Positions 32,700-64,000 of a stretch of 64,000 nt of DNA are shown piece by piece. The stretch covers positions 612,600,558 to 612,664,557 of the forward strand of contig NC_133619.1 in the NCBI RefSeq assembly GCF_048593235.1. Reading direction: 5' to 3'. The notes below the pieces were generated by a model. That model had not been told where the DNA came from, ran no database searches, and saw only the letters and a program-made list of their open reading frames with translations. The position numbers were made by a program, and so were the translations under genes. Every line of letters begins with the position of its first letter. Within the stretch, counting starts at the first letter, position 1. The stretch is from Sminthopsis crassicaudata (taxonomy: Eukaryota).

Positions 32700-42679
<9,980 letters not shown>

Positions 42680-44484: not shown

Positions 44485-47400
44485 CTGCAGAGAGCACAGG
44501 GGTGGGGAAGGTTAGGGGCAGAAAAGCTGAGGCACAAGGGTCTCAGCTGCCACTCCCAGCCCCCCTCACTCACCAGGACTCGGGCCTGCTCGGGGGTCAG
44601 CACGTCGCCCTCCTTGCACACTTGGTAGTCAGAGAGCAGGGTCACCACACCTGTGGAGAGGGTTGGGCTGAGGCAGGCCCACAGGGGATCCCATCCACCA
44701 CGGCCCCCGCTGGCCCTGGGCTCTTCATGAGGAGTCTTGAGTCAGAACCTCAAGAGTCACACGCGACCCCTACCCACCATGCCTAACAGTGCATATGCTC
44801 TCACACACCCCACAGCCCACCACCTCTAAGGGGGGGGAAGCCTGGGCCGGGTTTCCAAGCCAACCCAAGCCACGCTTCCTTTACCTTTCTTGAGGGCAGT
44901 GGGGAGGCCGAGCTGCCTCAGCTGGGGCTCCATCGAGTGGGGGAACTGCTCTAGGGGCCCTGCATCCAGGCTGACGGTGAAGGTGGCTTTGTTACCTGCC
45001 CGCGCGTAATCCATCTCAGTGTATTTACTGAACCACCTGGGGGGTGCAAGGAAGGAAGGGAGTCACTGCCACAGCTCTTGTCCAATGGCTCATGTAAGCC
45101 AGAGGCCATTGCTCTGGACCCCCAAGCCCAAAGGCACAGCAGTAGCCAGCCTCCTCACCTGCTCATTTTAGAGGCCCAAGTCCCACAGGCAGAAGGAGGT
45201 AGGATCCATGCCCAACATGCTCACACAGGACCTGTGCAGGCCCAGTAATATGTGGGGACCAGGCTAGGAGGATCCTGGGCCCAGGTCCCTGACCTTGGTG
45301 TACCTAGGCACTGGTTAATAAATGAACTAGGCAGCTGAGATGGTGGGAGGCTCAGGAAGCCCCTCAGCCTTGCTAGCAGCAGTGTCCTTCGCCTACCCGG
45401 CCCCCAGGAAGCCTCATGTAGATGCTGGCTGCTCGTCTACCTGGGCCTGTGTGCTCCTCCAGAGCCTGTGATCGGAGCTCAGGACCGTCCTCCCTACCTA
45501 GTAGGACTTGCTCTGGGTGCAGAGGCCTGGCCTGGGCCCAGCCTGTGACATCACAACTTTTTCAGTTGTACCAGAACTGAGCCCTGGGCCCAAAGGCTCC
45601 AGAGCACTAAAGGTGAAGAAGAGTAGGGAGCCTAGAGACCCTCCCAGCCTGTCCCAGCAGCTCTCCTGGGCTGGCCTCCAGGGGCCGGGTCTGCTTCTCC
45701 CCTCAGTCACAAACCCTCCCAGTCTCAGCACTCACTCATTCACTTCCTTCTTTGTTCTGTTGGTGAATAAGAGGCCGACTTCACCCCTCAGTTTCTTGCT
45801 GACCTTTGGGAAACAAACAAACAACCTCATGTCACCAGGGCCCAGGGGAGCTGCAGATGCGTCGAGGTGTGGAACTCCCAGCCCCAGTCCTGGAGTTCCA
45901 GCCACTGCTTGAACTTCCCCACAAGGCAACCCCTGTCATTGCCGGGCAACTCTGGGACGCTGCCCACTGAGCCGCCAGGACCAAAACCCGTATCTCCCGC
46001 ACCAGCCAAGGCCTTTTTGTTACTTTCATGCTCACAAGGGTCATTATAGATTAGGTTGAGTTGGGGGTGGTCCAGAAGGGGCAGGGGACAGAAGAAGATC
46101 AAGTCAGAGGGAGAGGATCAAGGATGGGCAGCTGCTCTCCCCAGTCCTGCCCGAGGCCGGTCTTCTCTGTGGGGGACACATTTCTTCTACCCTACCTGCA
46201 AATTAGGGAAGTCACTCCCTTAGAACCGGGGCCCTTAACCTGGCATCTCTAAACTTGTTTTTAAAAGGCCAGCCAACCCTATTTTGATAACTCTATTTAA
46301 GTAGTTTCCTTTGTAATCCCATGCACTTATTTTGTAGATTAAAAAGCCTGGCTTTTAAAGAGTTGAGGTTTAGGGTCTTACCAGAGACACTGTCAAAGGA
46401 GGGCTCGTAATGCAGCAAAACAAGTCATGACTAGGTGAGCTGCTCCCTCCCCAACTTTTATTCTGTTGTTCCTCAGAGAAGAGGAACAAAATGGCTCTGG
46501 TAGAGAAAGTGGTGAACCACTTGGGGAGGAGGAGTGAGACCAAAATGTTTTGTGGATGTAGGGGCAATGGTAGGGAGAGGGCAGGGTCTCCCAGGTGCTC
46601 AGCACCCAAGCTCTGGAAGCTCTAGAGCTCCAAGAAGCCAGGCTCCCTCTGTCCTGCTCATACACATTTCATGCTCATAGCAGGGTACATGTAACTGGCT
46701 AGGGGGGCCCTGTCTTAGACCAGTAGAATGGGATCTCCCCCTCCCCCCAGGATATAGAGCAAGGGCCCACCTGGTGCAGGTTGTCCTTATATTCATCAGC
46801 AGGACCTCGACCCAAAGCTACCATCATGACTTTGTTCTTGCCAAAGAATATCCTGCAGAGAAAGACAAGGAAATTATCAGGTGGAAATGATCTTTCCTGG
46901 GTTCTTTCTCTACTTTCCAGGGAAATTCTGCAAGGTGTTTATGGACCCAAGCACCAGGAATCTCAGTGCTGGCTCGGCGCCTCCTCACTAATTAATGCCT
47001 GTAAGCAGATCCCTTCCCCTCCATTTCCAGTTTTAAAATGATAATAGTCCTTGATCTGACTGGCCTGGGAGGAAAGTACTCTGTGAGCCTCAAGGCACGA
47101 CAGAAATGGAAATCACTCCTGTCATTATTGAGCTGCTTGCCCGATGGCTAGGCTGGGAAGGTGGAACCCCTGGACCTGAAAAGGGCATGAAAACTTCACA
47201 ACAACCCTGGAGGGGGATGCTGCAGATAGTATTAGTCTCATTTTAAAATGACGGTGAACCATAGAGGTTAAGTTACTGGCCCAGGGTCACAGAGCTCAGG
47301 TAAGATGTGGGACTAGAATTTGCATCCAGCACTTTCTCTTCTAATCCTGCTGTTGGTCAAATCAAGATGGAAAGGACTTTTGTATAATATTTGTATGACA

Positions 47401-50400
47401 TTTTGTATAATATTATGACAGGAGCAGGCAGTATTTTTGATAGATAAAAATCCAAGCTATTAGCACTATCACAAATATCAAAGCAATGCTGAGGTTCCAG
47501 TTCTCATCCATCAGGGCAACAAAGAAGAGTAACAACAAGGATAACAAATGAATGCTGAAGGGGCCGCAGGAAAATGGGTACACCAATGCCCTGTAGATGC
47601 AACTGTGACTGGGCTGCCTCTGCTGGCAGGACTGGGAACGATGCCCAAAGAGCTCCTAAACAAAACACATCTCTGACCTAATTATATCATGACTTGGCCC
47701 TTAAGAACAGGGACTGTCTTTTATCTTTCTTTGTATTCCTAGTGCTTAGCACAGCATCTGCACATAGTGGGCCTGGAGTGATTGACTTGGACTATTCCCC
47801 AAAAGGAAAAAAAGAGGTCAAGGACCTGTATGTACAAAAACATGAATAGCAACTCTTTTAGAGCTCTGATCAAAGCAATGATAAATCAGAAGACCAAAAG
47901 ATGGAGGAGGAAACGTGTTACTCCTGCCAAGGAGGAAGTGAACTTAAAAAGAGAGATGGATATTTTTGGATATGACCAATATAGGAACGTTTTGTTGACT
48001 TATTTTATTACTTATTTAAGAAAGGGACAGATAGGGCCTGTATCCCAAAGAGATCATAGAGGGAAAAGGATCCACATGTGCATAAATGTTTCTAGCAGCT
48101 CTTTTTGTAGTGGCAAAGAATTGGAAATTGAGGTGATGCTCTTCAATTGGGGAATGGCTAAATAAGATGAGAGCACCAACTGCTGAGGTGTCAGGAGGAC
48201 CTGAGTTCAAATCCAGCCTCAGGCACTTAATACTGGGCAAGTCACTTAACCTCAATTGCTTGGGGGAAGGGAGGGAATAAACCCAAAAAATTGATCAAAG
48301 GGAAGAAGGTGGTGGAAGAGACAGATTATAAAACTTTTAAAAACATATGAATTTATTCTAAAGAGAATAGATTTTAGGACACCAGGATTCAAGTGTAAAC
48401 TGTTCTACCACTAGCTGTGCGACCATGACCACGTCCCTTATTTCTAGGCTTTGGTTCCTAAATCTTTAAGGCATTTTTTAACTCACAGAATTTTTATGTA
48501 AATGTCAGCTGTAGCTTTCCTATGTCCCATCATATTCTCTCTGCTATCATATTTAGCCTGTGAGCTCTTTTGGAGCTCAGAATATGTCATTTTCCATCTT
48601 TCAATCACTAGTATCCAGCATGTAATAAGCATTTAATAAAAGTCAGTTCAATGAGAAGGAAAGTATAATATGAGATAGAATATTTTTGAGGAACAGAGAT
48701 TTGCAATTCCTGGAGATGAAGACATATATGCTGGCAATGCCCAAGATCAGCAAGAACTGCAGTGTTTACCAGAGAAGGGAACTGGGAACTCAGAACAGAA
48801 GGCCAGCCATTTCTTGTCATATGAAAAAATACTCTAAATTACTCTTTAGAGAAATGCAAATTAAGACAACTCTGAGGTACCACTACACACCTCTCAGATT
48901 GGCTAAAATGACAGGAAAAGATAAAGATGAATATTGGCAGAGAGGTGGGAAAACGAAAACACTAATACACTGTTGGTGGAGTTGTGAATGGATCCAATCA
49001 TTCTGGAGAGCAATTTGGAACTATGCCCCAAAAGTTATCAAACTGTGCTTACCCTGTGATCCAGCAGTGTTTTTACTGGGCCTGTATCCCAAAGAGATCA
49101 TAGAGGGAAAAGGACCCACATGTGCAAGAATGTTTCTAGCAGCTCTTTTTGTAGTGGCAAAGAATCGGAAATTGAGGCGATGCCCTTCAAATGGGGAAAG
49201 GCTAAATAAGTTATGGTATATGAAAGCAATGGGAAATTATTGTTTAAGAAATGATGAATAGAGTGATTTCAAAAAAGTCTGAAAAGACTTACATTTACTT
49301 GATGCTGAGTGAAGCAAGCAGAACCAAAAGAACATTGTACACAGCAACAAGAAGATTATGTTTAGACTCGGCTCCTTTTAATAGTGATGTGATTTAGGCC
49401 AATTCTAAGAGACTTAGGGTGGAAAAAAGCCACCTGAATCCAGAGAACTATGGAGACTGAATGTGGATCAGAGCATGGTACTTTCACCCTCTTTTTGTTA
49501 TTTGTGTTTTTTCTCCTTTTGATCTGACTTTTCTTGCACAGCATGATGAATATGGAAATATGTTTAAAAGAATTGCACATGCTTAACCTATATCAGATTG
49601 TTTGCTATCTTGAAGAGCAAGGAGAAAAATTTGGAACATAGGTTTTGCAAAGGTGAATGGTGAAAGCTATCTTTGCATGTATTTGGAAAAATAAAATACT
49701 GTTTCAAAAACAAACAAAAAGGAGGAGCAACCCTCCCCCTCCCCTAGCTCCCTCCTTACCTGCTGTGCTTCCATGCATTCCTGATGTCCTTCAACTTGCT
49801 GTTCCTCATGTTTGCCACAGAGAAGATGAAAATGTATTTGTACGTGTCCACACATTTTCGAAGCTGTGAGGAAATTCGAGGGGCACGGTGTTAGGCAACT
49901 TAGTCCCCCCATAACATCTGAGCCTGTGACAATGTGTACATAGCTCTCTGCTCCCTACGCGAGGGCTGGGGCCAGCACTGCTGGTAACAGTATCCTGCAA
50001 CACTGCAGCACGTAATAAACACTTGTGGAAATTAATTAGTCAATGTTTTAGGAAAAAATAAGGCTGGGACTTGTTACTGGCCCTGCTGTCTAGACCTGAA
50101 TCCCTATTTCTACAGAGGTTTCTATTCCCTGGGTTTACAACCTGAGTCACAGTCCCCTGTTCTCTTGCTTCCATTAAATCCTGTGTCAGGTCTTTTGTTG
50201 ACTCTAGTCCCTGAAACAGAGCCTGACACCCCCCCCCCAAAAAAAAAACCTTGCACACATAGGCCGCACACCTGAAAATTTTTCTTTCCCACAGAATCCT
50301 CAGCTTTTTTTAAAGAGTGAACTCCAGCTGCTTCCAGACCAAGGCCTCCAGGCTCTTTCCCTGGCCCTGACTGGCCCCTCCCCCTCCCTTTGGCTCAGAC

Positions 50401-51468
50401 TCTGACCCCACCTGGCTCAGAATAAATGTAAACAGACATTGTTTCTATGCTGGCTAGAGAGCCCAGGAGACTGAGGTGGTCTCCCCTCAGGCCTGCTGAT
50501 CCCTCTGGCCAGAGGACCCGGCTCACAGCTCCTGACCCCTACCCTGTGGAACCTTTCCTCACGGCACCAAGACATCCTGTGGGCGGCCCCAGCCCTGAGG
50601 AGCCTAGTTCTTACCCCTCCCCTCCCGCTGCCCTGCCGGCTCTTACCTCCCCTATCAGGTTCTGCTTGAGTTCTAGGCCCTTCTTGGCGGTCTTCGTCAG
50701 GGACACTGCGGAGGAGAGAGCAGCTTAGAGAGGCTTTAGGGCTGGGGAAGGACCAGGGTGCTATGGGTCGGACAGGGGGCCTGGAGCTCGCAGACCCGCT
50801 GTCCCTGGGCCTAAAGCAGGCTGCCAAACCGTGGCCGATGCCTTCATGCAGCAAAGAAACGGGCCTCGGATGGGCTGGACTGGAACTCGGACCCTGAACC
50901 CAGGCAGGGGCCGACTTAATGCAGGCGGGTACACAGCAGGTGATGAATAAAGGCTCACGGGCAAGAACAGCCTCTGGACACGGTCCGGTGTGTCCAGAGC
51001 CGGGCGCCGCGGCGGGCCGGGGATCGCGTCCCTGGCACGGGGCAGATGATGGCTTGCCTCAGTTTCCCCATTTGTAAGCAGCATAAGTCTTACCCAGGGA
51101 TCCCTGGAAGGCGCTCAGCCCAGGGCCCTGCACACGGTAAGCGCCATGTCAAGGCGCTCCCAAGCCCTAACCGCGGACCCACACGCCGGGTCCCAGCACC
51201 GACGGGCGCCGACCTGTGATTCGGGACAAGTGCTGACCCTCTCCATCTCCTCTCCCCCCGTTTTCCTCGGTAGAGGAGGAACGAACGCGATGTTGGCAGA
51301 GAGAGACCCTGCTCCTCCCCAGCCTCAGTTTCCCCAGGTGCAGTACGCAATCCCTGCTCGGGATGGGATGGGGGGGTCTCGGGCTCCCCAGAGAGACCGC
51401 CCCCCGCCCCCAGCTCCGGCCAGCGGCCCTCACAGCTCACCCTTCTTGTCGCGTTTGGACTTAGGCAT
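44329..51468 (-). CDS. MRTO4: mRNA turnover protein 4 homolog (60S biogenesis factor, uL10/P0 paralog); 8 exons, 726 nt, 241 aa
   Basis: Exons 51468-51441, 50705-50647, 49863-49760, 46852-46771, 45803-45736, 45036-44885, 44650-44574, 44484-44329; all GT-AG in phase; [15 protein letters not shown]...acidic tail DSDDD*. Confidence 0.97.
44574..44650 (-). CDS. MRTO4: MRTO4 exon 7 ([25 protein letters not shown])
   Basis: 77 nt; GT-AG. Confidence 0.95.
44885..45036 (-). CDS. MRTO4: MRTO4 exon 6 ([14 protein letters not shown]...PTALKK)
   Basis: 152 nt; GT-AG. Confidence 0.95.
45736..45803 (-). CDS. MRTO4: MRTO4 exon 5 ([22 protein letters not shown])
   Basis: 68 nt; GT-AG. Confidence 0.95.
46771..46852 (-). 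CDS. MRTO4: MRTO4 exon 4 ([14 protein letters not shown]...DNLHQ)
   Basis: 82 nt; GT-AG. Confidence 0.95.
47440..49720 (+). mobile_element. Cluster of L1 3' fragments and SINE/MIR pieces in MRTO4 intron 3
   Basis: ORF 48686-49261 contains [15 protein letters not shown]...IHCWWSC; 3'UTR and A-tail ~49700. Confidence 0.8.
49760..49863 (-). CDS. MRTO4: MRTO4 exon 3 ([34 protein letters not shown])
   Basis: 104 nt; GT-AG. Confidence 0.95.
50647..50705 (-). CDS. MRTO4: MRTO4 exon 2 ([19 protein letters not shown])
   Basis: 59 nt; GT-AG. Confidence 0.95.
51441..51468 (-). CDS. MRTO4: MRTO4 exon 1 coding part (MPKSKRDKK)
   Basis: 28 nt; G|gtgagc donor. Confidence 0.93.
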
Positions 51469-51745
51469 GGTGCTCCCACACGTGCGCCCTCCCGGCTACG
51501 CTTGCGAGGACCTCGGAACCGCGAGGGCTCTTGGGATGCGGGCGGTCCAGGGTGCCTAAGTCTAGTGCCTGATTCCGGCTCCCGGCACTTCCGTGACCTC
51601 GCACAGTAGCGTGCTCGGTCGCCCCGCCTCCGCGCCCACTTCCGGCGTTCGCGCCTGCGCCTTCCTCCTGGCTGAACCTGCAGGGCCGGAAGCGCTGTGC
51701 ATGCCGGGCCGGCGGCGGGCCGGACCCTCAGCCGGTTTCTCCATC
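51469..51745. promoter_or_regulatory. Bidirectional CpG-island promoter MRTO4/EMC1 with ETS (GABP-type) sites
   Basis: 277 bp between divergent ATGs; CACTTCCG 51586-51593, CACTTCCGG 51637-51645, CCGGAAGC 51686-51693. Confidence 0.85.
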
Positions 51746-51840
51746 ATGGCGGCGGCACTTGCCGCCCGGCTCTGGCTCTGGGCCGCGCTTCTGGCCTCGG
51801 CGACGGCCGTGTACGAGGACCAAGTGGGCAAGTTTGATTG
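51746..51840 (+). CDS. EMC1: EMC1 exon 1
   Basis: 95 nt; TG|gtgcgt donor. Confidence 0.95.
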
Positions 51841-54800
51841 GTGCGTATGTAGGGTGAAGGCCCCTCCTGAGGCAAGAGGGGTCTTGCGAGATAGTGGGGG
51901 AACGCAGCTTGTCTTCCCGGTCGCATAACCTCGGGGTCAGGGGTCACCATCCGGGCAACCGGAGGTGCATGGGTCAAAGGTTACTACGGGGATACTCTCC
52001 GTTCCCATTCTCTGGGAATCTGAATCACATAACTCGAGGGTCAGAAGTCACTGACCCGTAGTGAGCTCGCTTCCACACGAACTTGTTCCAGAACTGGTCA
52101 TTCATTCCCATCTCCCCCCTTTCGGGATGTTGGGGATCCTGCGGTTGGCCCTCGTGGGGCTTGGGAGGGGTGACCCTCGTGCTGAGTGAAGCAGGACATG
52201 GCTTAGAGCTGCAGCTGGAGGGCGGCCCCGCAGGCCGGCGCCCATTGTACAGATGAGGAAACTGAGACCCAGAGAAGCCGGGGAATTTGCCCGAGGTCAC
52301 AGAGGCACAGGCGGGGTCTGAACCGGGCTCTGTTGTAACGTTTTCAGTTCTGAAGTTCCCGGGGCTCCCTGTCCCCCACCTCTGACATCCAGGATGATTC
52401 CTTTCCAGTTCCAACCTATCCCAGTCCCTTTTAGCCCCGGTGTTTGTGGTTCTAGGTTCCCTCTGGTTCTGACCTCCCGGGTTCTAAAGGCCCTCCCAGC
52501 TCTGACATCCCGGGTTCTAAGGTTCTCCCAGTCCTGACCTCCCGGGTTCTAAGGGCCCTCCCAGCTCTGACATCCCGGGTTCTAAGGGCCCTCCCAGCTC
52601 TGACCTCCCGGGTTCTAAGGCCCTCCCAGCTCTGACACCCTGGGTTCTAAGGGCCCTGCCAGCTCTGACCTCCTGGGTTCTAGGGGCCCTGCCAGCTCTG
52701 ACCTCCTGGGTTCTAAGGGCTCTCCCAGCTCTGACATCCCGGGTTCTAAGGGCCCTCCCAGCTCTGACATCCCGGGTTCTAAGGTTCTCCCAGTCCTGAC
52801 CTCCCGGGTTCTAAGGGCCCTCCCAGCTCTGACATCCCGGGTTCTAAAGGCCCTCCCAGCTCTGACCTCCCGGGTTCTAAGGGCCCTCCCAGCTCTGACC
52901 TCCCGGGTTCTAAGGGCCCTCCCAGCTCTGACCTCCCGGGTTCTAAGGGCCCTCCCAGCTCTGACCTCCCGGGTTCTAAGGGCCCTCCCAGCTCTGACCT
53001 CCCGGGTTCTAAGGGCCCTCCCAGCTCTGACCTCCCGGGTTCTAAGGGCCCTCCCAGCTCTGACCTCCCGGGTTCTAAGGGCCCTCCCAGCTCTGACACC
53101 CTGGGTTCTAAGGGCCCTCCCATCTCTGACATCCTGGGTTCTAAGGGCCCTCCCAGCCTGACATCCTGGGTTCTAAGAGCCCTCCCAGCTCTGACCTCCT
53201 GGGTTCTAAGGGCCCTCCCAGCTCTGACCTCCCGGGTTCTAAGGGCCCTCTCAGCTCTGACCTCCTGGGTTCTAAGGTTCTCCCAGCTCTGACCTCCTGG
53301 GTTCTAAGGGCCCTCCCAGCTCTGACCTCCCGGGTTCTAAGGGCCCTCCCAGCACTGACCTCCTGGGTTCTAAGGGCCCTCCCAGCTCTGACCTCCTGGG
53401 TTCTAAGGGCCCTCCCAGCTCTGACCTCCTGGGTTCTAAGGTTCTCCCAGCTCTGACATTCCATGTTCTAAGGGCCCTCCCAGCTCCAACATCCTGGGTT
53501 CTAAAGGCCCTCCCAGCTCTGACCTCCTGGGTTCTAAGGACCCTCCCAGCTCTGACCTCCTGGGTTCTAAGGGCCCTCCCAGCTCTGACCTCCCGGGTTC
53601 TAAGGGCCCTCTCAGCTCTGACCTCCTGGGTTCTAAGGTTCTCCCAGCTCTGACCTCCTGGGTTCTAAGGGCCCTCCCAGCTCTGACCTCCCGGGTTCTA
53701 AGGGCCCTCCCAGCACTGACCTCCTGGGTTCTAAGGGCCCTCCCAGCTCTGACCTCCTGGGTTCTAAGGGCCCTCCCAGCTCTGACCTCCTGGGTTCTAA
53801 GGTTCTCCCAGCTCTGACATTCCATGTTCTAAGGGCCCTCCCAGCTCCAACATCCTGGGTTCTAAAGGCCCTCCCAGCTCTGACCTCCTGGGTTCTAAGG
53901 ACCCTCCCAGCTCTGACCTCCTGGGTTCTAAGGACCCTCCCAGCTCTGACCTCCCGGGTTCTAAGGGCCCTCCCAGCTCTGACCTCTCGGGTTCTAAGGG
54001 CCCTCCCAGCTCTGACCTCCAGGGTTCTAAGGGCCCTCCCAGCTCTGACCTCCTGGGTTCTAAGGGCCCTCCCAGCTCTGACCTCCTGGGTTCTAAGGTT
54101 CTCCCAGCTCTGACATTCCATGATCTAAGGGCCCTCCCAGCTCTGACCTCCTGGGTTCTAAGGGCCCTCCCAGCTCTGACCTCCCGGGTTCTAAGGGCCC
54201 TCCCAGCTCTGACATCCCGGGTTCTAAGGTTCTCCCAGTCCTGACCTCCCGGGTTCTAAGGGCCCTCCCAGCTCTGACATCCCGGGTTCTAAGGGCCCTC
54301 CCAGCTCTGACCTCCCGGGTTCTAAGGGCCTTCCCAGCTCTGACCTCCTGGGTTCTAAGGGCCCTCTCAGCTCTGACCTCCTGGGTTCTAAGGTTCTCCC
54401 AGCTCTGACATTCCATGTTCTAAGGGCCCTCCCAGCTCTGACCTCCCGGGTTCTAAGGGCCCTCCCAGCTCTGACCTCCTGGGTTCTAAGGGACCTCCCA
54501 GCTCTGACCTCCCGGGTTCTAAGGGCCCTCCCAGCTCTGACCTCCCGGGTTCTAAGGGCCTTCCCAGCTCTGACCTCCCGGGTTCTAAGGGACCTCCCAG
54601 CTCTGACCTCCCGGGTTCTAAGGGACCTCCCAGCTCTGACCTCCCGGGTTCTAAGGGCCCTCCCAGCTCTGACCTCCCGGGTTCTAAGGGCCCTCCCAGC
54701 TCTGACCTCCCGGGTTCTAAGGGCCCTCCCAGCTCTGAGCTCCCTGGTTCTAAGGGCCCTCCCAGCTCTGACCTCCCGGGTTCTAAGGGCCCTCCCAGCT

Positions 54801-57800
54801 CTGACCTCCCGGGTTCTAAGGGCCCTCCCAGCTCTGACCTCCCTGGTTCTAAGGGCCCTCCCAGCTCTGACCTCCTGGGTTCTAAGGGCCCTCCCAGCTC
54901 TAACCTCCTGGGTTCTAAGGGCCCTCCCAGCTCTGACCTCCCATGTTCTAAGGGCCCTCCCAGCTCTGACACCCTGGGTTATAAGGGCCCTCCCAGCTCT
55001 GACCTCCCGGGTTCTAAGGGCCCTCCCAGCTCTGTCACCCTGGGTTATAAGGGCCCTCCCAGCTCTGACCTCCTGGGTTCTAAGGGCCCTCCCAGCTCTA
55101 ACCTCCTGGGTTCTAAGGGCCCTCCCAGCTCTGACCTCCCGGGTTCTAAGGGCCCTCCCAGCTCTGACACCCTGGGTTATAAGGGCCCTCCCAGCTCTGA
55201 CCTCCTGGGTTCTAAGGGCCCTCCCAGCTCTAACCTCCCGGGTTCTAAGGGCCCTCCCAGCTCTGACCTCCCGGGTTCTAAGGACCCTCCCAGCTCTGAC
55301 CTCCTCGGTTCTAAAGGCCCTCCCAGCTCTGAGCTCCCGGGTTCTAAGGGCCCTCCCAGCTCTGACCTCCTGGGTTCTAAGGGCCCTCCCAGTTCTGACC
55401 TCCTGGGTTCTAAGGGCCCTCCCAGCTCTGACCTCCTGGGTTCTAAGGCCCTCCCAGCTCTGACCTCCCGGGTTCTAAGGGCCCTCCCAGCTCTGACATC
55501 CCGGGTTCTAAGGCCCTCCCAGCTCTGACCTCCCAGGTTCCAAGGGCCCTCCCAGCTCTGACATCCCAGGTTCTAAGAGACCTCCCAGCTCTGACATCCC
55601 ATGTTCTAAGAGCCAGAAGTAAATGGAATTGTATTCCACAATTGGGACTAATCTGCAGAGGCATAGACAGGAAAAGGAGTATCGGGCAGATAGAGTAGTT
55701 TGGTTAGAATATATTGTGCATAAAGGGAAGTGATGTGTTGGAAATATGGGAAAGGTAATCTAACTCAACAGAGGGTCACCTACAGAGGAGCATCTCGAGG
55801 ACCTTGATACATTCTCTTTCCATTTGGACTTTACTATGTAGGGTATTTTTGATGACAATCGTGAACCCTTAGGAAGCATTTGCTTTTGTCATCTTACTGA
55901 TGGAGAAAACAATCCTTATGGCTGCATTTTATCCCTACTAAATTCAGTGCTTTTTTTTAATATCAAGAAATAGTAAACACAACAGGATCTCGTGTTCTGT
56001 GTACCTGTCAGTCATTTATGTGAATGAAGATGTTGTTTGCTGTAGAAAATGGCTTGTGAAAATCTTCCTTATTCTTTTTCCTATTGTCATCAAGAATGCC
56101 CTCCAAAAAAATAATAATGATAATTCTCAAAAATAATTGTATAACCATGAAAAAGGTATGAAGGTTGCTAGTCTTTGCTGCCTTATCATCAACCTTATCT
56201 GCAAGGTTGCTGTCTGTCCCTGATTTTTTCTCATTTATTTCCTGTCTGCTTTTTCAAAGTCAACTTTTGAATTCTAAATTCTATCCCTTCCTTTCTTTCC
56301 CCCCATATTGAGAAGGCAAGCAATTTGAATAGGTTTTACAAATGTAGTCATGTAAAACACATTTGCGCAAAAGTCACGTGAGCTTTTTCTTTTGTTTTTA
56401 AAGAATCTTGAGGTATTCTTGACTTTGTTGGGTTTCTCTCCAAGCTTTCTGAACATTTTACTTTCTATTACTTTTCTCCTCTTTCATGAAGCAAGTCTAC
56501 TTGAAATCTTTCACACGCTATATTCTTTCATAATATTTTGCAAATGAGTTTCTATCTTACACTATTGTTGCCCCACATGTTTGTACTTAGCAAAGTGTGT
56601 AAGATTACAAAGAATCAAATTGTGTTAGAATAGATTTATAAAAATATTAAAAAAAAAATCCGTGGGTCCTAGATTAAGAATTATTCCAATCAAGTAAAAT
56701 GACAGGAAACATTCCAAATCTATAGATGCTTGCCAAAAAAATTCTCAGCTTTTTGGCCTTCTTGTGATTTCTTTAATTAGTTAAAGAAGTTCCTTAAACT
56801 TCTCTAAGAAATCATCTTGGTTTATATCATTGTGGTTTCCTTTACTTCCCATTTTTTGGCATCAGTCGCTTGTTTGATAACATCTGGACTTTGTACTTAT
56901 GAATGAGTGGTGGTATTACATATAGCTGATTCAGAAATTACTACATTGCCTTCCATTTATTTAATATGTAAACCTTGTAGGGGTATGATCTTGGTCTATG
57001 CTTTAATTAAGTTTGTAGTGTTGTGATGCAGTTGGTCATAATTTTACTCTTATAATAAAGAAAAATAGTTAAACAGAAACATTATACTGTGAACCTGTCT
57101 TGCTTTGTATATATAGTCAATAAAGATTTATTAAGCTCCTGTTATGTGCCAGGTAGCATGCTAAGAGCTGGGGATATAAAATATGAAAGAACTTAAAATA
57201 TAATGGGGAAGAAGGCATACCGCAGGAAGCTGGAAATGGAACAGGAATTGGGGTGGAGAGGGAACATGGAAGAAAAGTCAGAGAAGTCCCAGAGTTGTAC
57301 AGCCAGAGCAGAAATGAGGAGTCCTGTTCTTCCTAAATAGGTCACTACTCTTCTGAGTAGTGTTTCTCCATGACTAAAATAACTCGTGACTTCAGAATTT
57401 AGGTTTCTTTTAGTGCCCTTTTCATGTACATTCTTGTATGATATGGTCATTGTGTATGTTCTTTTGACTCTCCTTTCATTGTCACTTGAATGTGTATCTT
57501 TCAGTGTCTCTCAGAATTTCTCTTAGAGTTATTACTAACAGTTAGTAATCCATTATTTTAGGGAAGAACTGGAAACAAAATAGATGCCCATTGATTGGGG
57601 AATGGCTAACCAAGTAATGGTACACAAATGTACAGTGATGGGATAGCATTGTGTTGTAAGAAATGATGAGTAAGGCAAAATAAGCATGGGAAGGCTTCTA
57701 AACTCATGCAAAGTGAAGTCAGCAGAACCAGAAAAAAATGTGTGCATAGCTACCACAACAATGTAAATGGAACAACAACACAGTGATTGAAACTAAGTGA

Positions 57801-61600: not shown

Positions 61601-64000
61601 TGAAGGTCTCTAGAGCCATTGTGATGGCTGTGAAATTAAATTGAATTAAAGACAACCATCAGTGTGGATTTAGAGATGAAGCTATTTCTTATACTTTTGT
61701 TATGATATAGTATTGGCAAATAATAAGAACATTCATGTCTTGAAACTATTTCATGCACACTTGTAGTTTGTCTACTTTGGTGGGCAATACCATGTGCACT
61801 GAAATGTTTCTGGCTGCTGGTGTATCGGATTAATTTTTTGGAAGGCAGGCCACTCATTTTGTTATATCAAACCTGTAATCTTCAATTTGTCTAGATCGTA
61901 ATTGTTCTCTGGGAGGAGGTTTTTTGGGGAGCTTCTGGAGGCAGCCAGGAGTTAAAGTCTTTACTGTCTCTTTCCAAATCTTATCTCCAGATCCTTTGTT
62001 TTCTCCTTCAAGTCTTGTCTCCTTCACTTGGGGCTCGGCTAGCTTTCTTAGAGGCCTCTCTCTCTCTCTCTCTGGTTCCTGAGAGCTTTTGTCTGTGTCT
62101 CCAGCCAGCACAACAGTGGAATTTTGAATGACTCTCTTGACTCTGAATCTCCTAGAGTGTGGGAATCAGACTCCGCCTCCGAGAGTGGGCTGGTGGGTAC
62201 TCCCTGGGCTTGTGAGAGCTTCTTAAAAAGTATGCTCTCTTAAAGGTGTGAAAGGTGTGAACTCTGAACTAGAGAATTGTTAAGTACCATGCTAAATTAG
62301 ACAACCAATTTAGCACCTTGTAAGAATCCTAATACAAACTGTTATCATGAGGGTTTCAAATAGATCCATATTGTGTGGCCTTTCTATTGCTTACATCCAT
62401 AGTCAGTTACATTTAACCAAGCAAGGTGCTGACCCAATTAGTATTGTCATCAAAGTCCAATTGGCCAACATTTCAGGATTCTTGCCTGGCCTTTACAGTT
62501 TGTGGTCTCAGGGCACTTGGCAGCCCTCGCCCTGACATTCCTTTATTTCATTCTTGTCCTCAAAGGAAATAGCCAGTAGGTCCCTGGTGGGACTCTGTTT
62601 AATGAGATACTTGGCTTATATACTTATATATGCTCATAAGATACTTGAGTTTTGTATAGAAGCGGTCATCTGGTTGGAGATGGTAATTGGGTACTAATGT
62701 GGGCATCCTCTAGGAAATAGGATGAGTATTTGAGTTTTGTTTTGTCAAGCCAGCTGATCTTTTGTGTGCTGAAAGGGAAGACAGTAAAAGCTACAGTCCA
62801 TTATTGATGACTTCATAAAGGGGATTCCTTTGTTTTGCTTGATTGTTCTTTCTTGTTACAAAGGAGGACTTCTACTTATAGGAGAGAGTAAGGTTGTGAT
62901 AGAGAGAGAAACATCCTTTTTTTTTCCCTCCTCAAAGAAACATCACTAAAACAGTAAACTCCACAGAAGAAAACAATAAATATTGCCCCCATGTTAAATT
63001 TAATGTGCGCTTGTAAAAACCTCTCTCTCAACATCACAGTTTACTATCTTTTTTTTTTTTTTGTTTTATTTTTGTTATATTGAAATGTTTATATTGATAA
63101 TTGTTCATCTTATAACCAAAAAAATTTTTTTTTTTAATTATATAATCAAAGCTGTCTTGAGGGTCTTTGGGGGATTTTTTTCTCTTTGAATTCAGTGACA
63201 ATAAGTGGAGAGTTATTAGATTGGAGGCTTGTTGAGGACAACACTTTTATCTCTTCTTTAATATTAGCCAGCATACCCAATTCTATACATGGAATAGATG
63301 CATTTCATTAACTGAGATAGGATCAATTTTTACCTAATGCTGTTCTGTCAATTCTCATGTGGTACTTTGGGGATCTTATCTATAAGTTATTCCCTTAAAA
63401 TTTTTTTTGCTAAAGGCATAAAGTAATTATATAAGTTAATAATATTGCTTTATTATTTCTAAAGTACTTCCTTTACAAAAATCATGGTGTAAAAATCATG
63501 CCTGTTTTATATATATAGAAATAGATTCAGACATGAGGTTATGTACAATTCTTCATATAAGCTAATGAGTGATTAGACTCAATATTCCTCGTTTCAGTAT
63601 TCATTCTATTACACTATGCTTCCTTCATCTCTCATAGATCTAAACGGGATCTTAGAACCTCTTTCTCTCCTCCCAAAAATGATAAAATGGCCTGGAGAGA
63701 GACTTTTAATTTCTTTTCTTCTTGAACATATACTGTTTCTTTCTAACTTATTTAGAAACAAATCTCTTCAGGAGCCAGTGATCATATCCCTAAATTCAAT
63801 AATGAAGAATATACCACTTTGCATTTGTATTGTTCTGTTAACTTTTAAAATAATTTATGTAATATTAACTGAGCTCTTGCTTTCCTCTATCTCCATATTC
63901 AGGAGGCAACAGTATATAGGGAAACTCAAGTTTGCCTCCTTAGAATGTGCCCCTGGATCGAAGAAAATGGTTGTGGCTACTGAGGAGAATGTGATTGCAG
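51746..64000 (+). CDS. EMC1: ER membrane protein complex subunit 1, 5' partial (exon 1 51746-51840; exon 2 from 63903, running off the window)
   Basis: Signal peptide [21 protein letters not shown] then [11 protein letters not shown]|[14 protein letters not shown]...[10 protein letters not shown]; 12,062-nt GT-AG intron 1. Confidence 0.96.
52440..55610 (-). repeat. 33-bp minisatellite, ~95 units, reverse orientation relative to the AKR7A arrays
   Basis: + strand unit CTCTGACCTCC(C/T)GGGTTCTAAGGGCCCTCCCAG is the reverse complement of the AKR7A unit. Confidence 0.98.
58584..58796 (-). mobile_element. Very short young L1 3' end with long poly(A), inserted in a MIR-like element
   Basis: 15-bp TSD caagtgaactttctt at 58569-58583 and 58797-58811. 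Confidence 0.9.
58910..59790 (+). mobile_element. Older L1 3' fragment
   Basis: ORF2 C-terminal and 3'UTR similarity; A-tail. Confidence 0.8.
60640..61640 (+). mobile_element. RTE-clade LINE RT fragment interrupted by an antisense L1 3' fragment (~60838-61460)
   Basis: Decayed translation ...[15 protein letters not shown] | [20 protein letters not shown]...; gcagta duplicated at 60825 and 61461. Confidence 0.7.
61860..62340 (-). mobile_element. Solo-LTR-like element, same family as 11280-11760
   Basis: Shared ordered motifs; starts TG. Confidence 0.5.
63903..64000 (+). CDS. EMC1: EMC1 exon 2 (partial)
   Basis: Pyrimidine tract + cag| acceptor at 63901-63902; phase matches exon 1. Confidence 0.95.

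What the first reader, a model, noticed from the sequence alone, without database searches (positions are those of the whole stretch)
52440..55610. The same 33-bp minisatellite occurs, inverted and ~95 units long, at a non-paralogous site in EMC1 intron 1
The AKR7A duplication explains two arrays but not this one. A near-identical consensus at an unrelated locus 15-43 kb away implies local transposition or ectopic conversion of a VNTR, or a dispersed minisatellite family. Inverted arrays flanking AKR7A2 exons 3-7, MRTO4 and EMC1 exon 1 are also substrates for inversion or fold-back pairing. Many units carry CCGGG versus CTGGG, consistent with CpG methylation and decay beside a CpG-island promoter.
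Basis: partly seen in the sequence, partly recalled or inferred. Interest (0 to 1): 0.7.

Follow-up and report, generated by a model that had tools for sequence, protein, structure and literature searches.

The report
Old multi-locus intronic minisatellite, EMC1 copy
A 3.1-kb run of about 96 copies of a 33-base unit really sits in the first intron of EMC1, upside-down relative to two smaller runs of the same unit in two neighbouring AKR7A genes. It looks like an old, non-coding repeat family found at several places, not a recent local jump, so it is a fairly ordinary finding.

Summary
Tandem Repeats Finder gives 95.8 copies of a 33-bp unit at 52468-55614, inverted relative to arrays at 9212-9718 and 37135-38070. 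The consensus is identical except at two CpG sites. The big array (A3) lies 627 bp into EMC1 intron 1. Its flanks share nothing with the AKR7A arrays, which sit at the start of intron 2 of two paralogs.

The arrays share unit types, so they have one ancestor, but neither is a recent copy of the other. A3 has fixed TG at one CpG site where A2 keeps CG. A1 and A2 have fixed CA at the other site where A3 keeps CG. The paralog introns differ by K2P 0.12-0.14, so the arrays are old.

A3 still turns over in place: it holds a perfect 361-bp block duplication.

Three other coded organisms hold about the share of exact words expected from consensus units. One public short-read contig encodes a diverged array of the same unit beside a different MIR copy.

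I could not check that it is the same unit.

Verdict: new member of a known kind (multi-locus minisatellite), low to moderate interest.

The parts
52468..55614 (-). A3: about 96 units of 33/32 bp in EMC1 intron 1. The unit is written in the CAGAGC... orientation, which is the minus strand here.
   Evidence: TRF; unit table; core search
52340..52467 (-). Decayed unit-like stretch between A3 and the MIR remnant
   Evidence: Read from sequence; last parsed unit scores 4
52200..52339 (-). Old MIR-type SINE remnant (core and B-box part), forward on the minus strand, with its head end abutting the array
   Evidence: Sequence. A 32-nt core match to another copy at 6826-6857. The MIR identity rests on general knowledge of the MIR core sequence.
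53180..53933 (.). Perfect direct duplication of a 361-bp (11-unit) block inside A3: 53180-53572 equals 53541-53933
9212..9718 (+). A1: 15 units at the start of intron 2 of AKR7A paralog 1
37135..38070 (+). A2: 28 units at the start of intron 2 of the AKR7A2-like gene. It begins 17 nt after the splice donor.
36926..37117 (+). AKR7A2-like exon 2. Its last 7-8 bases plus the donor continue the phase of the repeat unit.
   Evidence: PDB 2bp1_A residues 101-163, E 1e-29; flank-to-unit alignment 20/24
8999..9192 (+). Exon 2 of AKR7A paralog 1
51746..51841 (+). EMC1 exon 1 coding part (32 codons).
   Evidence: local translation
63901..63999 (+). Start of EMC1 exon 2
   Evidence: PDB 6ww7_A and 8eoi_A, E 8e-11
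44829..45062 (-). Open stretch holding an MRTO4 exon. The gene lies between A2 and A3.
   Evidence: PDB 8fkr_SQ residues 114-166, E 9e-28
50619..50650 (-). Best solitary match to the unit in the window (20 of 22), at the donor of MRTO4 exon 2
   Evidence: Score 36 against a shuffled-unit mean of 15.9, sd 3.1, max 29.

Best explanation
A3 is a genuine, non-coding, intronic minisatellite (VNTR). It belongs to an old multi-locus family of one 33-bp unit.

All three arrays in the window descend from one ancestral, already polymorphic array or unit that carried two CpG sites. The AKR7A copy was doubled by the gene duplication. The EMC1 copy separated at least about as long ago.

Since then each array has evolved on its own, by CpG decay and by unequal exchange or replication slippage that amplifies blocks of units. 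That turnover is how A3 grew to 96 units. No sequence feature points to a function.

Shown here: the arrays, their positions, their shared and private variants, and the recent block duplication. Inferred: the age, the family's spread outside this window, and the lack of function.

How the unit first reached the second locus is unresolved. The candidates are carriage on a transposable element and templated copying at a site that resembles the unit.
For: Same unit at an unrelated site:
- Searches show one unit in three arrays. One search shows no flank homology for A3.

Common ancestry from more than one unit type:
- The variant carrying both 25A and 31T occurs in A1, A2 and A3.
- A 32-bp variant occurs in A2 (unit 5) and nine times or more in A3.
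- The 15T variant occurs in A1 and A3.

Not a recent copy:
- Positions 7-8 read TG in 82 of 82 A3 units, but CG 8, TG 8, CA 3 in A2.
- Positions 26-27 read CA 14 of 14 in A1 and CA 18, TG 2 in A2, but CG 39, CA 32, TG 7 in A3.
- CCCGGG occurs 0, 0 and 43 times in A1, A2 and A3.

Age:
- The paralogous introns differ by K2P 0.12-0.14, and both paralogs carry the array at the same place.

Turnover in place:
- An 11-unit run is identical at lag 11. This is a perfect 393-bp match at period 361.
- The variants lie in blocks along the array.

Spread beyond these loci:
- Organisms B, C and D hold 0.20-0.26 of the sampled words. Words built only from the two main unit types make up 0.235 of the positions.
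- P0031, an ORF on a 960-bp Logan contig, translates a diverged array of the same 11-codon unit, including the GPLEP core. It runs into a MIR core that is not the window's copy, and its flanks match nothing in the window.
- Earlier scan note s1-179208 reports a dispersed 33-bp family about 2 Mb away. This is an unverified lead.
Against: - No genome-wide count was possible, so 'dispersed' rests on indirect evidence.
- P0031 comes from an unknown organism. It could in principle be a very diverged orthologue.
- Reading the shares as consensus words assumes the words are sampled by position.
- In this 64-kb window the unit occurs only in the three arrays. It has no significant solitary copies (nhmmer E above 0.3), as a purely local origin would also predict.
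- The end of AKR7A exon 2 plus its donor is in phase with the unit, which hints at a birth at AKR7A.
Confidence: 0.58

Rival explanations
1. Local birth and one-off copying in cis. On this reading the unit arose at the AKR7A exon 2 donor, and is made of the exon end, the donor and the intron start. A multi-unit piece was later copied in inverted orientation into EMC1 intron 1, 14 kb away, by replication template switching or templated break repair.
For: - The 26 nt before A2 (exon end plus donor) align to the periodic unit at 20 of 24. Only about 1 in 10,000 random 26-mers of the window reach a similar score.
- The unit looks like a splice donor followed by G runs.
- A short distance and an inverted orientation are typical of template switching (general knowledge).
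- There are no solitary copies elsewhere in the window.
- Earlier notes describe splice-donor minisatellites elsewhere in this genome (unverified).
Against: - The fixed differences at both CpG sites mean any copying was ancient, not recent.
- P0031 points to at least one further locus beside another MIR copy.
- Note s1-179208 reports a 33-bp family at very many places.
- The pre-array 'unit' is truncated.
- The donor of MRTO4 exon 2 matches the unit about as well (20 of 22). Donor-like similarity can therefore arise without an array.
Confidence: 0.22
2. Carried by a transposable element. On this reading the unit derives from part of a SINE or LINE, either a MIR-type 3' tail or a SINE head. The arrays then grew independently from separate insertions of that element.
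For: - A 20-nt motif that I recalled as the tail of marsupial MIR/CR1-type elements matches the units with 1-3 mismatches (114 hits).
- A diverged copy of such a tail lies at about 6885-6938 in the window, and agrees with the unit at about 19 of 24 positions by eye.
- A CR1 consensus primer holds a related motif (PMC3350527).
- MIR remnants abut A3, A1, A2 and the P0031 array.
- 23% of human minisatellites and satellites derive from transposable elements, and some of these are multi-locus (PMC3389668).
Against: - The arrays share no element sequence in their flanks.
- nhmmer with a unit profile finds nothing significant in the masked window. It does not hit the three SINE heads at about 1550-1650, 15588 and 48185.
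- The tail motif covers only about 24 of the 33 bases, and its consensus is from memory.
- The adjoining MIRs lie in different relative orientations and meet the arrays with different parts.
- MIRs are so common that adjacency is weak evidence.
Confidence: 0.15
3. Assembly artefact. On this reading the array, or its placement in EMC1, does not exist in the animal.
For: - Long homogeneous arrays are error-prone in assemblies.
- The perfect 361-bp duplication could be an assembly error.
Against: - Two samples from two studies hold 0.74-0.85 of the sampled words of flank plus array. That includes more than the flank and consensus words.
- The unit variants are structured, and some are shared with A1 and A2.
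Confidence: 0.03

Closest known systems
Multi-locus tandem repeats (mlTRs; Ames et al. 2008, as cited in Ahmed & Liang 2012, PMC3389668)
   Same: One minisatellite unit forms arrays at more than one non-paralogous locus. After initiation each array grows by local duplication of units.
   Different: Derivation from a transposable element, the usual source of mlTRs, is not shown here. The number of loci is unknown.
Classical GC-rich hypervariable minisatellites (Jeffreys type, for example the 33-bp myoglobin-intron repeat family)
   Same: A 33-bp GC-rich unit with strand asymmetry, an intronic position, internal variant repeats, and a GCTGG-containing core-like stretch (by eye, from memory).
   Different: In Jeffreys families only a core of 10-15 bp is shared between loci. 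Here the whole 33-bp unit is shared. Length polymorphism was not tested.
Splice-donor minisatellites. These are arrays that start at an exon end and repeat its donor. Earlier scan notes s1-179211 and s1-176098 cite human ABCA7, F7, IFI6 and CBS.
   Same: A1 and A2 start 17 nt after the AKR7A exon 2 donor. The exon end is in phase with the unit. 11 units of A1 and 13 of A2 carry GAG|GTCAGAG.
   Different: The repeated 'donor' has C at +3, which is a weak donor. A3 is antisense to EMC1, so it carries no donors. Use of the decoy donors was not tested.
The 'dispersed SINE-head minisatellite family' of this genome (scan note s1-179208)
   Same: Same genome, same unit length (33 bp), several arrays within tens of kb, found in other coded organisms, and arrays next to old SINE remnants.
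   Different: The identity of the unit could not be checked. In my window the unit shows no significant similarity to SINE heads.

Membership tests
Minisatellite / VNTR | Head-to-tail tandem array of a 10-100 bp unit | tested here: met
   TRF: period 33, 95.8 copies, 91% matches
Minisatellite / VNTR | Internal variant repeats and signs of unit turnover | tested here: met
   42 unit types in A3; perfect 11-unit block duplication
Minisatellite / VNTR | Length polymorphism between individuals | not testable with these tools
All listed runs are kept as short-read contigs.
Multi-locus tandem repeat family | The same unit at two or more non-paralogous loci | tested here: met
   The consensus is identical except at positions 7 and 27. 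A3 flanks are unrelated to the A1 and A2 flanks.
Multi-locus tandem repeat family | Loci dispersed over the genome rather than clustered locally | tested here: inconclusive
   Only indirect evidence: word shares in organisms B-D, the P0031 contig and note s1-179208. The metagenome and viral scans were empty.
Minisatellite derived from a transposable element | The unit aligns significantly to an element consensus, or the array overlaps an annotated element | tested here: inconclusive
   A tail motif recalled from memory matches at 17-19 of 20, and a diverged in-window copy lies at about 6885-6938. nhmmer gives E above 0.3 everywhere outside the arrays. No Dfam or Repbase library was on hand.
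SINE-head minisatellite family (s1-179208) | The unit is homologous to a SINE head | tested here: not met
   The three SINE heads in the window are not hit by the unit profile. The resemblance to the MIR B-box is about 58% by eye only.
SINE-head minisatellite family (s1-179208) | Same unit sequence as the arrays near RCC2 | not testable with these tools
Findings look-ups by sequence and by relatives were blank.
Splice-donor minisatellite | The array starts at the exon end and repeats the donor | tested here: met
   This applies to A1 and A2 only. Exon end plus donor align to the unit at 20 of 24. GAGGTCAGAG occurs 11 and 13 times in sense. It does not apply to A3.
Splice-donor minisatellite | The repeated donors are used in RNA | not tested
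   No RNA reads could be laid.

The most novel reading that the evidence does not exclude
A minisatellite whose unit was born at the AKR7A exon 2 splice donor (exon end, donor and G-rich intron start) has been copied without any transposable element into other introns. These are EMC1 intron 1 and perhaps the arrays near RCC2. The copying would be by template switching, or templated break repair, that lands where the local sequence resembles the unit (splice donors, MIR B-boxes). That would be a homology-guided way for a VNTR to 'transpose' in cis.
Probability: 0.12. Interest if true: 0.65.

Novelty: new member of a known kind. Interest (0 to 1): 0.3.

Why it matters
It matters little for gene function. 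The array is non-coding, poor in CpG, and antisense to EMC1.

It is a clean, base-resolved case of one complete 33-bp unit kept at non-paralogous loci for tens of millions of years. The CpG-site states order the events. If the family's other members were mapped, it could show how minisatellites reach new loci, which is still poorly explained (PMC3389668 states that the postulated mechanisms explain only 6% of TE-derived tandem repeats).

There are practical points too. The inverted arrays A2 and A3 bracket essential exons, so they are a place to look for structural variants. The AKR7A arrays put 11-13 weak decoy donors right after a real donor.

Tried and rejected
So there are no spanning reads, no depth test and no cross-species junction test.
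EMC1 exon 1 was only read by local translation.
- One exception: the findings look-up was asked for 52440-55610, but the tool itself widened it to 50940-57110, which covers those places. It returned nothing.

Searches that came back empty:
- Exact-pattern scans of metagenome contigs (two) and viral contigs (one) found nothing. These collections probably hold no dasyurid DNA.
- A word-indexed protein search with an array ORF found nothing. Homogeneous arrays probably collapse in short-read contigs.
- A protein search with AKR7A exon 2 plus read-through returned 81 ORFs from other vertebrates. None carries the unit after the exon and none is from a close relative.
- Findings look-ups by sequence, relatives and extra words added nothing.

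Ideas tested and dropped:
- A back-translation test for a proto-unit in those read-through tails was not significant (best score 26, controls 25).
- CTCF-motif and tRNA T-arm readings of the unit were considered by eye and dropped.
- I first took the identical consensus across arrays as a sign of constraint or conversion. I rejected this, because a majority consensus of a slowly turning array simply keeps the ancestral state.
Full report
THE OBSERVATION

Tandem Repeats Finder reports three arrays of one 33-bp unit:
- A1 at 9212-9718: 15.3 copies, 94% matches.
- A2 at 37135-38070: 28.2 copies, 87% matches.
- A3 at 52468-55614: 95.8 copies, 91% matches, as the reverse complement of the other two.

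A 19-nt core of the unit, allowing 3 mismatches, occurs 123 times, against 0.05 expected by chance. Every hit is inside these arrays.

I cut the arrays into units. A3 has 96 units: 82 of 33 bp and 14 of 32 bp. The majority unit of each array differs only at unit positions 7 and 27. One exact unit type is present in all three arrays. The window holds no N.

GENE CONTEXT

According to earlier notes of this scan, the genome is the fat-tailed dunnart.
- The exon just before A2 (36926-37117) matches AKR7A2 residues 101-163 (2bp1_A, E 1e-29).
- AKR7A2 exon 1 lies near 33.3-33.6 kb, and exons 3-7 lie at 38362-42676. So A2 is in intron 2, beginning 17 nt after the donor.
- A1 sits at the same place in a second AKR7A paralog.
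- MRTO4 runs on the minus strand from about 51.47 to 44.4 kb (8fkr_SQ, E 9e-28).
- The EMC1 exon 1 coding sequence is 51746-51841. It was read by local translation only.
- EMC1 exon 2 starts near 63901 (6ww7_A residues 33-64, E 8e-11).

A3 therefore begins 627 bp into the 12-kb EMC1 intron 1.

IS A3 PARALOGOUS TO A1 AND A2?

It is not. Two kb on each side of A3 has no blastn match at the A1 or A2 flanks. The A1 and A2 flanks match each other at 83-85% over hundreds of bases. Intron K2P between the paralogs is 0.12-0.14. So the AKR7A array predates an old gene duplication.

HOW THE THREE ARRAYS ARE RELATED

They share more than the consensus:
- The double variant 25A plus 31T occurs in all three.
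- A 32-bp variant occurs in A2 and repeatedly in A3.
- The 15T variant occurs in A1 and A3.

So the common ancestor already had several unit types.

Two dinucleotides behave as decayed CpGs:

| Positions | A1 | A2 | A3 |
|---|---|---|---|
| 7-8 | TG 12, CG 2 | CG 8, TG 8, CA 3 | TG 82 of 82 |
| 26-27 | CA 14 | CA 18, TG 2 | CG 39, CA 32, TG 7 |

Both deamination products occur at each site, so CG is ancestral at both. A3 has lost the first CpG entirely. A1 and A2 have lost the second. Neither lineage can be a recent copy of the other.

The simplest order of events is that the CA state became fixed in the AKR7A array before the duplication. On that order the split from A3 is at least that old. 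This step is inference.

The identical consensus is not evidence of constraint, because a majority consensus of a slowly turning array keeps the ancestral base.

A3 IN PLACE

Units 51-61 equal units 62-72 exactly. At base level, 53180-53572 equals 53541-53933, with a period of 361 bp. The CG and CA variants lie in blocks. So the CCGGG/CTGGG pattern records a few mutations amplified by unit turnover.

A3 has a GC fraction of 0.625 but a CpG observed/expected ratio of 0.16. The promoter island at 50400-52440 has 0.64. The array is therefore outside the island, and its low CpG fits long-term methylation. Methylation itself was not tested.

DISPERSED OR LOCAL?

This is the crux, and I could only test it indirectly.

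(a) Runs of the same organism from two samples hold 0.74-0.85 of the sampled words of 51300-56400. Three other coded organisms hold 0.20-0.26. Words made only of the two main unit types cover 0.235 of the positions of the query: 0.095 for the CCCAGG type alone and 0.153 for the CCCGGG type alone. If the words are sampled by position, the other organisms hold just the consensus words of both types.

(b) A full HMMER scan with an array ORF found P0031.
- P0031 is a 225-aa ORF on a single 960-bp Logan contig.
- It translates a diverged array of the same 11-codon unit and runs into a MIR core.
- Its two ends match nothing in the window.
- Its MIR part resembles the window's MIR copy only at the level of the family.
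- It is therefore most likely another locus.

(c) Note s1-179208 reports a 33-bp family 'at very many places' in this genome, about 2 Mb away. I could not verify that the unit is the same.

Against dispersal:
- The window holds no significant solitary copy (nhmmer E above 0.3).
- The metagenome and viral scans found nothing.

WHERE THE UNIT CAME FROM

This is unresolved. There are three leads.

(i) The end of AKR7A exon 2 plus its donor aligns with the periodic unit at 20 of 24. About 1 in 10,000 random 26-mers of the window do as well. However, the donor of MRTO4 exon 2 is the best solitary match in the window (20 of 22; score 36 against a shuffled-unit mean of 15.9, sd 3.1). The unit is therefore simply donor-like, with G runs.

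(ii) A tail motif of MIR/CR1-type elements that I recalled from memory matches the units at 17-19 of 20. A decayed copy of such a tail lies at about 6885-6938.

(iii) By eye, the unit resembles a MIR B-box at about 58%. MIR remnants abut A3, A1 and A2, and the P0031 array.

None of these passes a proper test here. The three SINE heads in the window are not hit by the unit profile.

COMPARISON WITH KNOWN KINDS

The closest kind is the multi-locus tandem repeat (PMC3389668). A1 and A2 also fit the description of a splice-donor minisatellite. This is a new member of a known kind.

LIMITS

Exons were searched singly by reference.

Noticed in passing
window 37100-37170 and 9175-9245: The AKR7A arrays start 17 nt after the exon 2 donor, and the exon's last bases are in phase with the unit. 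11 units of A1 and 13 of A2 carry GAG|GTCAGAG, a weak decoy donor with C at +3, directly after the real donor.
   Followed up: partly
window 50619-50706 (-): MRTO4 exon 2 and its donor hold the best solitary match to the unit in the window (20 of 22). Further unit-like pieces lie just upstream in the exon and just downstream in the intron.
   Followed up: partly
window 53180-53933: A perfect 361-bp (11-unit) tandem duplication inside A3. It is either very recent turnover or an assembly duplication.
   Followed up: partly
window 52468-55614: Each unit holds the nuclear-receptor half-site AGGTCA: 68 copies in A3 on the minus strand, and 11 and 19 in A1 and A2. In the EMC1 sense, 72 units read CCCTCCCAG|C, which looks like a splice acceptor. 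No function was tested.
   Followed up: no
window 37824-37866: One A2 unit is lengthened to 43 bp by a run of 13 G.
   Followed up: no
protein P0031 (Logan contig, 960 bp): An ORF that translates a diverged array of the same 11-codon unit, followed by a MIR core. The organism is unknown and the DNA could not be fetched.
   Followed up: partly
window 6700-6950: A cluster of old MIR-type pieces. One has a 3' tail at about 6885-6938 that resembles 24 nt of the minisatellite unit.
   Followed up: partly
window 10021-10125 vs 38362-38466, and 8999-9192 vs 36924-37117: The AKR7A exon after the array (exon 3) is 95% identical between the paralogs. The exon before it (exon 2) is 86% identical and the introns 88-89%. 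This is uneven divergence, possibly from patchy conversion or from different constraint.
   Followed up: no
run X19: One very large run of the window's own organism holds only 0.24 of the words, the same share as the other species. It looks as if only the consensus array words were kept.
   Followed up: no
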